From Macrostomum lignano (Eukaryota), in the NCBI GenBank assembly GCA_002269645.1, contig NIVC01000447.1, forward strand, positions 1 to 33,369: DNA of 33,369 nucleotides. Direction: 5' to 3'. The notes under the pieces were generated by a model that saw only the letters and a list, made by a program, of their open reading frames with translations, searched no databases and was not told the DNA's origin. Both the position numbers and the translations under genes were made by a program. Positions 11,204 through 21,500 of the stretch are shown here, in pieces (position 1 is the stretch's first letter; every line of letters begins with the position of its first letter).

Positions 11204-11643
11204 AACTGAGGATCTGGGAGTCTGGCACAGCAACTGAGGATCTGGGAGACTGGCCCAGCAACTGAGGATCTGGGAGTCTGGCACAGCAACTGAGGATCTG
11301 GGAGACTGGCCCAGCAACTGAGGATCTGGGAGGCTGGCCCAACAACTGAGGATCTGGGAGGCTGGCACAGCAACTGAGGATCTGGGAGACTGTCCCAGCA
11401 ACTGAGGATCTGGGAGGCTGGCCCAGCAACTGAGGATCTGGGAGGCTGGTGGCCCAGCAACTGAGGATCTGGGAGGCTGGCCAAGCAACTGAGGATCTTG
11501 GGAGGCGGGCCCAACAACTGAGGATCTTGGGAGGCTGTGGCCCAGCAACTGAGGATCTAGGAGGCTGGCCCAGCAACTGAGGATCTGGGAGGCTGGCCCA
11601 GCAACTGAGGATCTTGGGAGGCTGGTTCAGCAACTGAAGATCA
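11204..11643. repeat. 28-bp minisatellite caactgaggatctgggaggctggcccag in the DIP2 3' flank/UTR
   Basis: About 15 copies, starting about 75 nt after the DIP2 stop codon. Confidence 0.95.
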
Positions 11644-11718
11644 GAGACAAAACAACAAAGCAATACATGAGACACAGCAGAAAAAATTCAGGAGCTCAAG
11701 ATGAGGCGCACCCCAGCA

Positions 11719-11971
11719 TCACAGGTTGTAGGCCACATATACAGGATCCAGCCGGTCGCTCAGGAACCGGTCCCGCAGAACCGACCGAAGCTTCTCACCC
11801 CGCCCATTGGCCGGGATGGCGCCAGGGTCGCAGACGATGAGCACGGAGGCCACCAGCTGATGATCCCGGAGCAGCGCCGTGGTGGCCTGCGGCACCGCAT
11901 CGAGGGCGTCGGACTCGCGACAGCTGAGCTCCATTACCACAGCCAGCAGGGAGTCGCATGCGAACACCGCG
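11719..11971 (-). CDS. DIP2: DIP2 terminal exon (C-AVFACDSLL...RDRFLSDRLDPVYVAYNL-stop)
   Basis: Matches the characteristic DIP2 C-terminus (GEKQRMHLRDGFLADQLDPIYVAYNM). Acceptor tttccAG at 11973-11972, phase 2, and TGA at 11721-11719. Confidence 0.95.
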
Positions 11972-12029
11972 CTGGAAATGCATCAGTTGGTGTACAAGTA
12001 CAGCTGGCTTTAACCCTGTGTGTTTGCGT

Positions 12030-12515
12030 GCCTGTCTGTCTGTCTGTCTGTCTGTCTGTCTGTCTGTCTGTCTTAGTGTCTGTCTGTCTGTCTTAGTGTT
12101 TGTCTGTCTTTCTGTCTGTCTGTCTTTTTGTCTGTCTGTCTGCCTGTCTGTCTGTCTGCCTGTCTTAGTGTCTGTCTGTTCTGTCTTAGTGTCTGTCTGT
12201 CTGTCTGTCCGTCTGTCTGTCTTAGTGTCTGTCTGTCTGTCTGTCTGTCTGTCTGTCTGTCTGTTTGTCTGGTTTCAGTCTGTCTGTCTGTCTGTCTGTC
12301 TGTCTTAGTGTCTGTCTGTCTTAGTGTCTTAGTGTCTGTCTGTCTGTCTGTCTGTCTGTCTGTCTGTTCTGTCTTAGTGTCTGTCTGTCTGTCTGTCTGT
12401 CTGTCTGTCTGTCTGTCTGTCTGTGTCTGTCTGTCTGTCTGTCTGTCTGTCTGTCTGTCTGTCTGTCTGTCTGTCTGTCTGTCTGTCTGTCTGCGTGTCT
12501 GTCTGTGTCTGTGTC
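12030..12515. repeat. (GTCT)n microsatellite interrupted by TCTTAGTG, filling DIP2 intron 11972-12538
   Basis: Direct reading. It is the reverse complement of the 9716-10512 array type. Confidence 0.97.
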
Positions 12516-12538
12516 TACCCTCTCCCTCAGCCGCTCAC

Positions 12539-17574: not shown

Positions 17575-18790
17575 GGATCTGGGTAGTTGAGGATCTGGGT
17601 AGTTAAGGATCTGGGTAGTTGAGGATCTGGGTAGTTGAGGATCTGGGTAGTTGAGGATCTGGGTAGTTGAGGATCTGGGTAGTTGAGGATCTGGGTAGTT
17701 GAGGATCTGGGTAGTTGAGGATCTGGGTAGTTGAGGATCTGGGTAGTTGAGGATCTGGGTAGTTGAGGATTTGGGTAGTTGAGGATTTGGGTAGTTGAGG
17801 ATCTGGGTAGTTGAGGATCTGGGTAGTTGAGGATCTGGGTAGTTGAGGATCTGGGTAGTTGAGGATCTGGGTAGTTGAGGATCTGGGTAGTTGAGGATCT
17901 GGGTAGTTGAGGATCTGGGTAGTTGAGGATCTGGGCAGTTGAGGATCTGGGTAGTTGAGGATCTGGGTAGTTGAGGATCTGGGTAGTTGAGGATCTGGGT
18001 AGTTGAGGATTTGGGTAGTTGAGGATCTGGGTAGTTGAGGATCTGGGTAGTTGAGGATCTGGGTAGTTGAGGATCTGGGTAGTTGAGGATTTGGGTAGCT
18101 GAGGATTTGGGTAGTTGAGGATTTGGGTAGTTGAGGATCTGGGTAGTTGAGGATTTGGGTAGTTGAGGATCTGGGTAGTTGAGGATCTGGGTAGTTGAGG
18201 ATCTGGGTAGTTGAGGATTCGGGTAGTTGAGGATCTGGGTAGTTGAGGATGTTGGTAGTTGAGGATTTGGGTAGTTAAGGATCTGGGTAGTTGAGGATCT
18301 CGGTAGTTGAGGATTTGGGTAGTTGAGGATCTGGGTAGTTGAGGATCTGGGTAGTTGAGGATCTGGGTAGTTGAGGATCTGGGTAGTTGAGGATTGGGTA
18401 GTTAAGGATCTGGGTAGTTGAGGATCTGGGTAGTTGAGGATCTGGGTAGTTGAGGATCTGGGTAGTTGAGGATCTGGGTAGTTGAGGATGTTGGTAGTTG
18501 AGGATCTGGGTAGTTGAGGATGTTGGTAGTTGAGGATCTGGGTAGTTGAGGATCTGGGTAGTTGAGGATCTGGGTAGTTGAGGATCTGGGTAGTTGAGGA
18601 TGTTGGTAGTTGAGGATCTGGGTAGTTGAGGATCTGGGTAGTTGAGGATGTTGGTAGTTGAGGATCTGGGTAGTTGAGGATGTTGGTAGTTGAGGATCTG
18701 GGTAGTTGAGGATCTGGGTAGTTGAGGATCTGGGTAGTTGAGGATCTGAGTTGAGGATCTGAGTTGAGGATCTGAGTTGAGGATCTGAGT
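17575..18790. repeat. 16-bp minisatellite gggtagttgaggatct (ending in a few 13-bp gagttgaggatct units) in DIP2 intron 17391-18970
   Basis: About 73 copies, flanked on both sides by degenerate 20-bp units. Confidence 0.97.
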
Positions 18791-18970
18791 TGAGGATCTA
18801 AGAAAAAATGAGGATCTGCGATGATCTAAGCTGAGGATCTGGGAAGTTGACTGAGGATCATAGAATCTATTTAAGGATCTATGAAGCTAGCTGAGAGTTT
18901 GAGACGCTACTCGAAAAATTATTTTTAATGTTAAAAAAACCACACAAAACAACCAGAGCCACTCTCTTAC

Positions 18971-19297
18971 CGAAGTAGGCGGGCCCAGAAAGCCGATCAA
19001 TCCGGTGCGCACAAAGGCCCCATCAGTGCCCGATCCCGCTGAGTCAATTTCGTCTCCCGTAGCGCTCACAGGCCGGCAGTTGAACACCCGTTCATTCGGC
19101 GAGTCGTTCCCGGCGTACCTGGCCGCTGAGTAGCGAGAGCAGACGCAGATTTCGCCAACTTCATCAACGCGGCACAGCTGCGGCCGGGACTCCGTGGCGC
19201 CCTGACGGCCGAGACGGACCACCGCGACAGCCGACTGGGGCAGCAGGTGGCCGCAGTCTTGCAGGGTGAGCGACGTGTAGGACGAATCAGAGTCCAC
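18971..19297 (-). CDS. DIP2: DIP2 exon (VDSDSSYTSLTLQDCG...QLCRVDEVGEICVC...FVRTGLIGFLGPPTS)
   Basis: Matches DIP2 QLCRTDEIGELCV and RTGLLGFIGP. Acceptor gccAG at 19299-19298 and donor TCG|GTAAGA at 18970. Confidence 0.95.
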
Positions 19298-19369
19298 CTG
19301 GCAGCGGCAGAGTGCAGGGGTTTCTGATAGGGTATTGACTCATTGACTGGGGGCCCAGAAACTGAGGAT

Positions 19370-21500
19370 TCTATTTGACTCTTGGAAGATATTTGAATAT
19401 TCTAGAGGCCCTCTAGGGATCTGGGAAGCTAATTGAGCATTTGGGGAGCTTTCTAGGGATCTGGGGAGCTTTCTAGGGATCTGGGGAGCTTTCTAGGGAT
19501 CTGGGGAGCTTTCTAGGGATCTGGGGAGCTTTCTAGGGATCTGGGGAGCTTTCTAGGGATCTGGGGAGCTTTCTAGGGATCTGGGGAGCTTTCTAGGGAT
19601 CTGGGGAGCTTTCTAGGGATCTGGGGAGCTTTCTAGGGATCTGGGGAGCTTTCTAGGGATCTGGGGAGCTTTCTAGGGATCTGGGGAGCTTTCTAGGGAT
19701 CTGGGGAGCTTTCTAGGGATCTGGGGAGCTTTCTAGGGATCTGGGAAATTATTTGAGGATCTGGGGGGCTTTCTAAGGATCTGGAAAGCCATTCGAGGAT
19801 CTGGGAAGCTATTTAAGGATCTGGGAAGCTATTTAAGGATCTGGGAAGCTATTTCAGGATCTAGAAAGCTATTTGAGGATCTAGAAAGCTATTTAAGGAT
19901 CTGAGAAGCTAGTTGAGGATCTGAGATGCTAGTTGAGGATCTGGGAAGCTATTTAAGGATCTGGGAAGCTATTTAAGGATCTGGGAAGCTATTTAGGGAT
20001 CTGGGAAGCTATTCAAAGATCTGGGAAGCTATTCAAGGATCTGGGAAGCTAGTTGAGGATCTGGGAAGCTATTTGAGGATCTGAAAATCTAATTGAGGAT
20101 CTGGCAAGCTAATTGAGGATCTGGAAATCTAATTGAAGATCTGGGAAGCTAATTGAGAATCTGGGAAGCTTTCTGAGAATCTAGGATGCTAGTTGAGGAT
20201 CTGGGAAGCTATCTAAGGAGCTGGAAAGCTATTTAAGGATCTGGGAAGCTAATTGAGGATCTGGGAAGCTAATTGAGGATCTGGGAAGCTATCTAAGGAG
20301 CTGGAAAGCTATTTAAGGATCTGGGAAGCTAATTGAGGATCTGGGAAGCTAATTGAGGATCTGGGAAGCTATCTAAGGAACTGGAAAGCTATTTAAGGAT
20401 CTGGGAAGCTATTTAAGGATCTGGGAAGCTATTCAAGGATCTGGGAAGCTAGTTGAGCATTTGGGGAGCTTTCTAGGGATCTGGGGAGCTTTCTAGGGAT
20501 CTGGGGAGCTTTCTAGGGATCTGGGGAGCTTTCTAGGGATCTGGGGAGCTTTCTAGGGATCTGGGGAGCTTTCTAGGGATCTGGGAAATTATTTGAGGAT
20601 CTGGGGGGCTTTCTAAGGATCTGGAAAGCCATTCGAGGATCTGGGAAGCTATTTAAGGATCTGGGAAGCTATTTCAGGATCTGAGAAGCTAGTTGAGGAT
20701 CTGAGATGCTAGTTGAGGATCTGGGAAGCTAGTTGAGGATCTGGGAAGCTATTTAAGGATCTGAGAAGCTAGTTGAGGATCTGAGATGCTAGTTGAGGAT
20801 CTGGGAAGCTAGTTGAGGATCTGGGAAGCTATTTAAGGATCTGGGAAGCTATTTAAGGATCTGGGAAGCTATTTAAGGATCTGGGAAACTATTCAAAGAT
20901 CTGGGAAGCTATTCAAGGATCTGGGAAGCTAGTTGAGGATCTGGGAATCTAATTGAAGATCTGGGAAGCTAATTGAGGATCTGGAAATCTAATTGAAGAT
21001 CTGGGAAGCTAATTGAGAATCTGGGAAGCTTTCTGAGAATCTGGGATGCTAGTTGAGGATCTGGGAAGCTATCTAAGGAGCTGGAAAGCTATTTAAGGAT
21101 CTGAGAAGCTAATTGAGGATCTGGGAAGCTAATTGAGGATCTGGGAAGCTATCTAAGGAGCTGGAAAGCTATTTAAGGATCTGGGAAGCTAGTTGAGGAT
21201 CTAGGAAGCTAATTGAGAATCTGGAAAGCTTTCTGAGAATCTGGGATGCTAGTTGAGGATCTGGAAAGCTATTTAAGGATCTGGAAGCTATTTAAGGATC
21301 TGGGAAGCTAATTGAGGATCTGGGAAGCTAATTGAGGATCTGGGAAGCTATCTAAGGAGCTGGAAAGCTATCTGAGGATTTGAGAAGCTATTTGAGGATT
21401 TGGGAAGCTAATTGAGGATCTGGAAATCTAATTGAAGATCTGGGAAGCTAATTGAAGATAATGGAAAGCTATTCGAGTATCTGGAACTCCAAATTACAAT
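19370..21500. repeat. 20-bp minisatellite (gggaagctagttgaggatct and variants such as ggggagctttctagggatct) in DIP2 intron 19298-21538
   Basis: About 105 units with a roughly 1-kb higher-order duplication. The diagnostic block at 19741-19800 recurs at 20581-20640. Confidence 0.96.

What the first reader, a model, noticed from the sequence alone, without database searches (positions are those of the whole stretch)
11204..21500. Four different minisatellites share one co-oriented core, TGAGGATCTGGG(A)
Seen: the 28-bp (caacTGAGGATCTGGGAggctggcccag), 22-bp (aaTGAGGATCTGGGActtggg..), 16-bp (tagtTGAGGATCTGGG) and 20-bp (agtTGAGGATCTGGGAagct) arrays sit in the 3' flank and three separate introns of DIP2. 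They are separated by exons and unrelated arrays, yet share a 12-13 nt core in the same orientation. The 28- and 20-bp units match at 16 of 17 positions. Established: shared cores among unrelated-length minisatellites are known (the Jeffreys chi-like core) and have been linked to recombination or protein binding. Inference: either a local seeding mechanism copies a short motif within one transcription unit (for example via eccDNA or template switching) before each copy amplifies with a new period, or the motif is kept as a binding site (UCCCAGAUCCUCA in the pre-mRNA). This is the best candidate for an undescribed system in the window.
Basis: partly seen in the sequence, partly recalled or inferred. 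Interest (0 to 1): 0.8.

Follow-up and report, generated by a model that had tools for sequence, protein, structure and literature searches.

The report
One intronic minisatellite family, four variants
Four tandem-repeat arrays in and just after one DIP2 gene really do share a motif, but they are diverged copies of a single ~20-bp repeat family rather than unrelated repeats, which is an ordinary pattern for dispersed satellite DNA.

Summary
TGAGGATCTGGG occurs 96 times, always on the + strand, and only in four arrays with periods of 28, 22/44, 16 and 20 bp. A GT-AG gene model with an unbroken 4014-nt reading frame puts these arrays in three introns and 77 nt past the stop codon of a minus-strand DIP2 homolog.

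The arrays are not unrelated minisatellites that share a core. Their similarity covers whole units:
- The 16-mer is the 20-mer minus 4 bp.
- The 28-mer is the 20-mer plus an 8-bp palindrome-forming insert, with 17 of the other 20 columns identical.
- Both edges of the 16-bp array carry degenerate 20/21-bp units.
- A relic 28-type unit sits at the edge of the 20-bp array.

The loci differ from each other no more than sub-variants inside the 20-bp array differ. The 12-mer is not consistently less variable than the spacer, and it is the minority unit in two arrays. I found no transposon-like flanks, no excess hairpin potential and no family-wide G-quadruplex motif.

Best reading: one repeat family was copied to four nearby sites and homogenised separately at each. 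This is a new member of a known kind. The copying route is unresolved because no other sequence from this genome was available. Interest is about 0.3.

The parts
11204..11642 (+). 28-bp array (about 15 units, AACTGAGGATCTGGGAGGCTGGCCCAGC). It starts 77 nt downstream of the DIP2 stop codon, in the 3'UTR or 3' flank. The unit equals the 20-bp unit plus the 8-bp insert GGCCCAGC, which creates the palindrome GCTGG-C-CCAGC.
14669..15735 (+). 22-bp array (about 48 units; majority unit AATGGGGATCTGGGACTTGGGG; 44-bp higher-order unit alternating GGATCTGGGA and GGATCTAGAAA). It fills 83% of intron I5 (14545-15834). This is the most diverged family member: it shares 13-17 nt with the others.
17569..18799 (+). 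16-bp array (about 77 units at 95% identity, TAGTTGAGGATCTGGG) in intron I3 (17391-18970). The unit is the 20-bp unit minus AAGC. It is the youngest and most homogeneous array. A 13-bp sub-variant, GTTGAGGATCTGA x4, sits at 18745-18796.
17452..17568 (+). Left edge of the I3 array: degenerate 20/21-bp units of the I2 type, for example GGGATGCTAGTTGAGGATTT (18/20). It aligns over 115 bp at 77% to I2 20688-20802.
18800..18909 (+). Right edge of the I3 array: degenerate 20-bp units. It aligns over 101 bp at 79% to the same I2 stretch. The order of unit variants matches I2 better than 196 of 200 unit-order shuffles.
19417..21484 (+). 20-bp array (about 103 units) with three sub-variants: TATTTAAGGATCTGGGAAGC, TAGTTGAGGATCTGGGAAGC and TTTCTAGGGATCTGGGGAGC. 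It has a higher-order periodicity of about 860 bp and fills 92% of intron I2 (19298-21538).
19347..19369 (+). Relic 28-bp-type unit, CTGGGGGCCCAGAAACTGAGGAT, at the acceptor-side edge of the I2 array. It matches the 3'-flank array at 21 of 23 positions and links the 28-bp and 20-bp arrays by descent.
11719..25052 (-). Host gene, a DIP2 (DISCO-interacting protein 2) homolog. Exons: Ea 25052-24567, Eb 22309-21539, Ec 19297-18971, Ed 17390-17127, Ee 16587-15835, Ef 14544-14002, Eg 13155-12539, Eh 11971-11719 (stop). All introns are GT-AG. In the transcript the core reads CCCAGAUCCUCA.

Best explanation
The four arrays are diverged copies of one minisatellite family. Its ancestral unit was about 20 bp, close to GCTAGTTGAGGATCTGGGAA. 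Repeat DNA of this family, at least one whole unit and probably a few tandem units, was copied to four sites within 10 kb: introns I2, I3 and I5 and the 3' flank of a DIP2 gene.

At each site, unequal exchange or slippage then expanded and homogenised the array independently. Each site fixed its own indel variant:
- minus 4 bp gave the 16-mer;
- plus an 8-bp palindromic insert gave the 28-mer;
- plus 2 bp gave the 22-mer, with a 44-bp higher-order unit;
- minus 7 bp gave a small 13-mer patch.

The 'core' is simply the stretch of the unit that none of these indels and few substitutions have touched. It is not a separate element.

Shown: common descent, whole-unit homology, relic older units at array edges, and locus-specific homogenisation.

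Inferred: the copying route. The most likely route is DNA-level, either repair or replication template switching between neighbouring arrays, or excision as circular DNA followed by nearby reinsertion. Also inferred: the copying was local in cis, rather than insertions drawn from a genome-wide pool.
For: - Whole-unit similarity. Consensus units aligned to the I2 20-mer score 14.5 (28-mer), 13.0 (44-mer) and 24.5 (16-mer), against a unit-shuffle null of 5 +/- 1.2 (0 of 300 shuffles). All nine other arrays in the window score at null level.
- Between-locus scores (13-24.5) are comparable to the score between two sub-variants inside the I2 array (15.5).
- TAGTTGAGGATCTGGG, the entire 16-mer, is contained in a 20-mer variant.
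- Both edges of the 16-bp array consist of 20/21-bp units. They align to I2 over 101-115 bp at 77-79%, scoring 60-68 bits against 18-22 bits between unrelated arrays. Local scores are 31-35 against 7.8 +/- 1.2 for base shuffles.
- A relic 28-type unit (21 of 23 positions) lies at the edge of the I2 array.
- Identity within arrays (95% in I3, 86-90% in the others) exceeds identity between loci. Array edges are expected to escape homogenisation, as described for other minisatellites (PMC3087553).
- A second repeat also occurs at two nearby sites: (AGAC)n with ACACTAAGAC interruptions. So array duplication near this gene is not specific to this core.
- Spread of tandem-repeat blocks to new euchromatic and genic sites by microhomology-mediated repair and eccDNA is documented elsewhere (PMC7403614, PMC11610590).
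Against: - The route and direction of copying are not shown.
- The 22-bp array shares only 13-17 contiguous nt with the others, so its membership rests on a shorter match.
- Conservation of unit-variant order, which would prove multi-unit block copying, holds for one I3 edge (4 of 200 shuffles reach it) but not for the other (162 of 200).
- GGATCT is the least variable hexamer in three of the four arrays. That could reflect some constraint.
- No genome-wide data were available, so local copying cannot be separated from independent insertions out of a larger pool.
- The second repeat pair, (AGAC)n, is inverted, so any local copying process does not always preserve orientation.
Confidence: 0.6

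Rival explanations
1. The family is abundant genome-wide, either as a dispersed satellite or as the internal repeat of a transposon such as a Helitron or MITE. Under this reading the four copies here are independent insertions from that pool. Their clustering and co-orientation come from chance or from selection against one orientation inside genes.
For: - Tandem repeats make up 47% of this window, and every one of eight consecutive introns carries an array. Arrays therefore arise or land very often in this genome.
- Co-orientation of four loci has p = 1/8.
- Dispersed intronic minisatellite families and Helitron-borne tandem repeats in introns are known (PMC4039745). [quoted passage not shown]
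Against: - The arrays share no non-repeat flanks, terminal inverted repeats or other transposon hallmarks.
- No family member, even with 2 mismatches to the core, occurs in the other 23 kb of the window, although that stretch holds about seven other arrays.
- A metagenome scan returned only 2-3-copy chance-like hits of mixed GC content. The source organism is probably absent from that collection, so this last point is weak.
Confidence: 0.25
2. The motif is kept by selection as a binding site or structural element. Candidates are C-rich CCCAGAUCCUCA in the pre-mRNA (an intronic splicing regulator or decoy 3' splice site, YCCCAG) or GGATCTGGG in DNA. Under this reading the arrays are multimerised sites.
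For: - All 225 near-core copies lie on one strand, antisense to the + strand as written and so sense in the transcript as CCCAG....
- GGATCT varies little in three arrays. The 12-mer is less variable than the spacer in the 28-bp array (0.056 vs 0.158) and the 20-bp array (0.120 vs 0.181).
- In C. elegans, an intronic minisatellite that carries known splicing-regulatory heptamers is enriched near alternative exons (PMC4039745).
Against: - The core is more variable than the spacer in the 16-bp array (0.037 vs 0.016) and equally variable in the 22-bp array (0.137 vs 0.129).
- The commonest variant in the youngest array changes the core itself (GGATTTGGG, 22%).
- The exact 12-mer is the minority unit in two arrays.
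- Homology extends into the spacer and the edges, so descent alone explains the sharing.
- One array lies outside any intron.
- There is no Rfam hit and no excess secondary structure. Canonical G4 motifs occur only in the 22-bp member.
Confidence: 0.1
3. The arrays arose independently, by chance or by convergent slippage on similar low-complexity sequence.
For: Short 2-3-copy arrays containing the same 12-mer turn up sporadically in unrelated metagenome contigs.
Against: - The expected number of 12-mer hits is 0 in shuffles.
- Unrelated arrays share at most 7 nt.
- Whole-unit and edge homology are far above the null.
Confidence: 0.02

Closest known systems
Dispersed euchromatic satellite DNA families that spread to new loci and are homogenised locus by locus (Drosophila Rsp-like/1.688, PMC7403614; Tribolium Cast1-9, PMC11610590)
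   Same: - One repeat family sits at several nearby genic or euchromatic sites.
- Expansion within each locus by unequal exchange, with higher-order repeats.
- Identity within arrays exceeds identity between arrays.
- The proposed spread is by microhomology-mediated repair or eccDNA, which needs no transposon flanks.
   Different: - Units here are 16-28 bp (minisatellite scale), not about 170-360 bp.
- Period length itself differs between loci because of indels.
- The copies lie within a single gene.
- Genome-wide distribution and presence on eccDNA are untested here.
CeRep25B, a 24-bp minisatellite family of C. elegans (PMC4039745)
   Same: It is a short-unit minisatellite family. About 75% of its copies lie in introns, and they are clustered regionally on particular chromosomes. 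It contains short motifs suspected of acting in splicing.
   Different: - There is no sequence similarity to this family.
- CeRep25B is near-palindromic, whereas these units are strongly strand-asymmetric (GC skew +0.2 to +0.8).
- Association with alternative splicing is untested here.
Jeffreys-type human hypervariable minisatellites sharing a chi-like G-rich core (from general knowledge)
   Same: Arrays of different period are G-rich on one strand and share a short common sequence.
   Different: - In the Jeffreys class the units are otherwise unrelated and scattered over the genome. Here the units are homologous along their whole length and the loci are adjacent.
- The core sequence, TGAGGATCTGGG, does not match GGGCAGGANG.
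Transposon-borne internal tandem repeats (Helitron/DINE-1-like or MITE-associated arrays; Helitron repeats in C. elegans introns noted in PMC4039745)
   Same: The same tandem repeat appears in several introns, possibly with an orientation bias.
   Different: No conserved non-repeat flanks, terminal repeats or hairpins accompany the arrays here.

Membership tests
Dispersed minisatellite/satellite family with locus-specific homogenisation | Head-to-tail tandem arrays at two or more separate loci | tested here: met
   There are four arrays, separated by exons and by unrelated arrays.
Dispersed minisatellite/satellite family with locus-specific homogenisation | Monomers from different loci are homologous along the unit, not only in a short motif | tested here: met
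   Unit alignments score 13-24.5 against a null of 5 +/- 1.2. Edge relics match over 101-115 bp at 77-79%. A 28-type relic matches at 21 of 23 positions. The 22-bp member has the weakest support.
Dispersed minisatellite/satellite family with locus-specific homogenisation | Identity within arrays exceeds identity between arrays (concerted evolution), with older variants at the array edges | tested here: met
   Identity is 95% within I3 and 86-90% within the other arrays, against 77-85% between loci. Degenerate ancestral-type units lie at both edges of I3 and at the edge of I2.
Dispersed minisatellite/satellite family with locus-specific homogenisation | Further copies elsewhere in the genome | not testable with these tools
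   The source organism is absent from the searchable collections. The best DIP2 hit is 46% identical, and the metagenome scan gave only unrelated 2-3-copy hits.
Jeffreys-type core-sharing minisatellites | Units are otherwise unrelated and share only a 10-15-nt core | tested here: not met
   Similarity extends through the spacers and the array edges.
Jeffreys-type core-sharing minisatellites | The core resembles the chi-like GGGCAGGANG | tested here: not met
   The core is TGAGGATCTGGG. The Jeffreys consensus is recalled from general knowledge.
Transposon-borne tandem repeats (Helitron/MITE) | Conserved non-repeat termini or flanks (terminal inverted repeats, 3' hairpin) and target-site duplications around each array | tested here: not met
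   All-against-all comparison of the 18 array flanks found only 8-17-nt matches with E of 0.05 or more. Several of these, among introns I2, I3 and I5, lie within degenerate repeat units; the others are short exact matches between non-repeat flanks at chance level.
Introner / intron transposition by reverse splicing | Whole-intron homology that includes the splice-site-proximal ends | tested here: not met
   Splice-proximal segments of I2, I3 and I5 are not similar. One family member lies outside any intron.
G-quadruplex-forming minisatellites (CEB1/CEB25-like) | Four G-runs of 3 or more separated by loops of 1-7 nt, recurring along the array | tested here: not met
   There are 7 canonical motifs in the 22-bp array and 0 in the 16-, 20- and 28-bp arrays. 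With loops of up to 12 nt there are 10 in the 20-bp array. This is not a property of the family.
Structured RNA or hairpin-forming repeat | Folding energy beyond shuffles, or a match to a known RNA family | tested here: not met
   z-scores are -0.5 to +1.5 for the core arrays. Rfam gives 0 hits.

The most novel reading that the evidence does not exclude
Seeding of new minisatellite arrays here may be a local, gene-scale process. Fragments of an existing array would be copied in cis into neighbouring introns and the 3' flank of the same transcription unit, for example by replication or repair template switching, or by transcription-associated breaks repaired from a nearby array. The process would mostly preserve orientation, and each copy would then be re-homogenised with a new period. 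If this were general in this genome, it would explain why eight consecutive introns each hold one array and why tandem repeats make up 47% of the window.
Probability: 0.15. Interest if true: 0.55.

Novelty: new member of a known kind. Interest (0 to 1): 0.3.

Why it matters
If the reading is right, this locus is a clean small-scale example of how one short repeat family diversifies into arrays of different period (13, 16, 20, 22/44 and 28 bp) through indels plus separate homogenisation at each site. It also shows how such arrays can inflate introns from roughly 100 bp to 0.5-2.3 kb. That is useful for annotating repeats and for understanding intron-size evolution in this unidentified repeat-rich genome. 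It does not point to a new kind of system. The open point of some interest is whether the spread was local in cis or came from a genome-wide pool.

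Tried and rejected
- Finding the family elsewhere. Their GC content ranged from 26% to 74%, and none belonged to this family. A full-text search for the core returned only PCR primers.
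- Identifying the organism. The best DIP2 hit is 46% identical (insects and nematodes score about equally), so no close relative is in the protein collection.
- Comparing orthologous introns. One look-up failed. Two distant DIP2 loci (L018, L019; GC about 35%) have different intron positions and no comparable arrays, so they say nothing about the origin of these arrays.
- Transposon or introner origin. The array flanks share nothing beyond degenerate repeat units.
- A link between the right flank of the 28-bp array and the I6 array through the 12-mer AGATCAGAGACA. It is not significant: 37 of 300 shuffles score as well.
- Membership of the I4 30-bp, I6, I1 and I0 arrays in the family. All score at null level.
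- Hairpin or cruciform propensity as the driver. There is no excess in the core arrays.
- G-quadruplex as the common property. It holds only for some members.
- A known RNA family. None was found.
- Multi-unit block copying. The unit-order test is significant for one I3 edge only, so I keep this as suggestive.

Full report
**1. The observation**

TGAGGATCTGGG occurs 96 times in the 33.4-kb window. Every copy is on the + strand, and dinucleotide shuffles give none. With up to two mismatches there are 225 copies on +, none on -, and none outside four regions. The shorter GGATCTGGG occurs 157 times on + and never on -.

Tandem Repeats Finder reports four arrays:
- 11204-11642: period 28, 15 copies.
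- 14669-15735: period 22, 49 copies.
- 17569-18799: period 16, 78 copies at 95% matches.
- 19417-21484: period 20, 103 copies.

**2. The gene context**

Exon-like GC-rich blocks on the minus strand match DISCO-interacting protein 2 (AMP-binding domains). The best hits are only 46% identical, so no close relative of the source organism is in the protein collection.

I placed splice sites by eye. All are GT-AG, and the eight exons join into an uninterrupted 4014-nt reading frame that ends at a TGA at 11719.

| Intron | Coordinates | Array inside |
|---|---|---|
| I0 | 25053-26478 | 23-bp |
| I1 | 22310-24566 | 23-bp |
| I2 | 19298-21538 | 20-bp core array |
| I3 | 17391-18970 | 16-bp core array |
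| I4 | 16588-17126 | 30-bp |
| I5 | 14545-15834 | 22-bp core array |
| I6 | 13156-14001 | 35/12-bp |
| I7 | 11972-12538 | (CTGT)n |

The 28-bp core array begins 77 nt after the stop codon. In the transcript the core reads CCCAGAUCCUCA.

**3. Is it only a core?**

It is not. Unrelated array consensi in this window share at most 5-7 nt, whereas the four arrays share 12-16 nt.

- The whole 16-mer, TAGTTGAGGATCTGGG, is contained in a common 20-mer variant. The 16-mer is the 20-mer minus AAGC.
- The 28-mer aligns to the 20-mer with a single 8-bp insert (GGCCCAGC, which creates the palindrome GCTGG-C-CCAGC). Seventeen of the other 20 columns are identical (sequence; score).
- Both edges of the 16-bp array (17452-17568 and 18800-18909) are made of degenerate 20/21-bp units. 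They align over 115 and 101 bp, at 77-79%, to one stretch of the I2 array. The scores are 60-68 bits, against 18-22 bits for the best match between unrelated arrays.
- Local alignment scores for those edges are 31-35, against 7.8 +/- 1.2 for base-shuffled queries.
- A relic 28-type unit, CTGGGGGCCCAGAAACTGAGGAT (21 of 23 positions), lies at the acceptor-side edge of the I2 array.
- The 22-bp array is the most diverged member. It shares GAA(A/C)TGAGGATCTGGGA (16 of 17) with the 28-mer and the variant TGAGGATCTAGAAA with I2.

In a uniform test, every family member aligned to the I2 20-mer scores 13-24.5, against a unit-shuffle null of 5 +/- 1.2. All nine other arrays in the window score at null level. 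Two sub-variants inside the I2 array score 15.5 against each other. The four 'different' minisatellites are therefore about as far apart as sub-families within one array.

**4. Is the core constrained?**

I cut each array into units with a walk that scores the whole unit, so that the core was not favoured. Mean per-column variability for the 12 core columns and for the rest:

| Array | Core columns | Other columns |
|---|---|---|
| 28-bp | 0.056 | 0.158 |
| 22-bp | 0.137 | 0.129 |
| 16-bp | 0.037 | 0.016 |
| 20-bp | 0.120 | 0.181 |

There is no consistent protection of the 12-mer. The commonest variant in the youngest array alters the core itself (GGATTTGGG, 22%). The majority units of the 22- and 20-bp arrays are TGGGGATCTGGG and TAAGGATCTGGG. 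GGATCT is the steadiest hexamer in three arrays, which I record as the one hint of constraint.

**5. Other properties checked**

- The array flanks share no non-repeat sequence, terminal repeats or other transposon hallmarks. The splice-proximal ends of the introns are unrelated. Neither a transposon cargo nor intron transposition is supported.
- Single-strand folding of the core arrays is no better than shuffles, with z between -0.5 and +1.5.
- Canonical G-quadruplex motifs occur in the 22-bp array (7) but not in the 16-, 20- or 28-bp arrays.
- Rfam finds nothing in the window.
- The arrays show higher-order structure: 44 bp in I5 and about 860 bp in I2.

**6. Context in the window**

Tandem repeats cover 47% of the window. 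Each of eight consecutive DIP2 introns consists of one array occupying 78-93% of its length.

A second repeat also occurs twice. (AGAC)n with ACACTAAGAC interruptions lies downstream of the gene (9714-10518, 17 interruptions). It also lies, inverted, in intron I7 (12032-12506, 9 interruptions). Related arrays at neighbouring sites are therefore not peculiar to this core, and orientation is not always preserved. With four loci, co-orientation alone has p = 1/8.

**7. Explanation**

One repeat family of about 20 bp was copied to four nearby sites. At each site it was expanded and homogenised separately, and each site fixed its own indel variant. The 'core' is the part of the unit that these changes left intact.

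Common descent and locus-specific homogenisation are shown. Relic units at the array edges fit the known exclusion of array boundaries from homogenisation (PMC3087553).

The copying step is inferred. The absence of transposon flanks and the tight cluster favour a DNA-level route: template switching or repair from a neighbouring array, or circular-DNA excision and reinsertion. Such routes have been proposed for Rsp-like/1.688 in Drosophila (PMC7403614) and for the Cast satellites in Tribolium (PMC11610590).

Copying as a multi-unit block is only suggested. The order of unit variants is conserved at one I3 edge (4 of 200 unit-order shuffles reach it) but not at the other (162 of 200).

**8. Rivals**

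- Independent insertions from a genome-wide pool or a transposon cannot be excluded without the genome.
- A selected RNA or DNA binding site is disfavoured by sections 3 and 4, but it is not excluded for the GGATCT hexamer.
- Chance or convergence is refuted.

**9. What I could not do**

No other sequence from this organism was reachable.
- The metagenome scan gave 17 unrelated loci with 2-3 copies each.
- A literature search for the core found only primers.
- Two distant DIP2 loci have different intron positions and no such arrays.

**10. Comparison and verdict**

The closest known things are dispersed euchromatic satellite families homogenised locus by locus, and dispersed intronic minisatellite families such as CeRep25B in C. 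elegans (PMC4039745).

It is not a Jeffreys-type core family. The units are homologous throughout, and the core is unrelated to the chi-like consensus.

Novelty: a new member of a known kind. Interest: about 0.3. The residual interest lies in whether the spread is local in cis, and in the one-array-per-intron architecture.

Noticed in passing
window 11972-26478 (introns I0-I7 of the minus-strand DIP2 gene): Each of eight consecutive introns holds exactly one long tandem array (period 4-35 bp) that fills 78-93% of the intron. Tandem repeats cover 47% of the whole window. Intron length here is essentially array length.
   Followed up: partly
window 9714-10518 (+) and 12032-12506 (inverted): The same compound microsatellite, (AGAC)n interrupted by ACACTAAGAC (17 and 9 interruptions), occurs downstream of the gene and, in inverted orientation, in the last intron. 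The two copies bracket the last exon and the 28-bp array as a large inverted repeat pair.
   Followed up: partly
window 16660-17108 (I4, 30-bp array) and 25120-26331 (I0, 23-bp array): These two otherwise unrelated arrays share the co-oriented 10-mer GAGACAGGTA. The plus-strand sequence resembles a 5' splice-site consensus (CAG|GTA) but is antisense to the gene. After multiple testing this is borderline (roughly p = 0.1).
   Followed up: partly
window 16660-16779 and 22600-22714: The 30-bp (I4) and 23-bp (I1) arrays fold as single-stranded DNA better than shuffles (z = -2.7 and -2.4). The core-bearing arrays do not.
   Followed up: no
window 18745-18796: A fifth period exists in the family: four copies of a 13-bp unit, GTTGAGGATCTGA, at the right end of the 16-bp array.
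   Followed up: partly
window 2036-3610 (-): A 524-aa open reading frame with RhoGEF (DH) and SOS1/NGEF-like PH domains lies downstream of DIP2 on the same strand. It is flanked by further unrelated arrays at 229-1805 (33 bp), 5960-6845 (42 bp) and 7725-8878 (34 bp).
   Followed up: partly
window 12539-25052 (exon junctions): Six of the seven introns between exons Ea and Eh are phase 0 (junctions after aa 162, 419, 528, 616, 867 and 1048). Several of these positions are absent from two distant DIP2 loci: L019 has one exon spanning aa 241-667.
   Followed up: partly
window 27427-28663: A 1.2-kb CT-rich low-complexity tract (GC skew -0.84, 11% purines on +) lies upstream of the mapped DIP2 exons. 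Its strand bias is opposite to that of the intronic arrays.
   Followed up: no
L004, L013, L015, L017 (metagenome contigs): Some metagenome contigs (GC 53-70%) carry short runs of GGATCTGA/GGATCTGG-like 8-mers that include the 12-mer by chance. They are unrelated to this family but show that the motif arises easily in simple GATCTG-type repeats.
   Followed up: no
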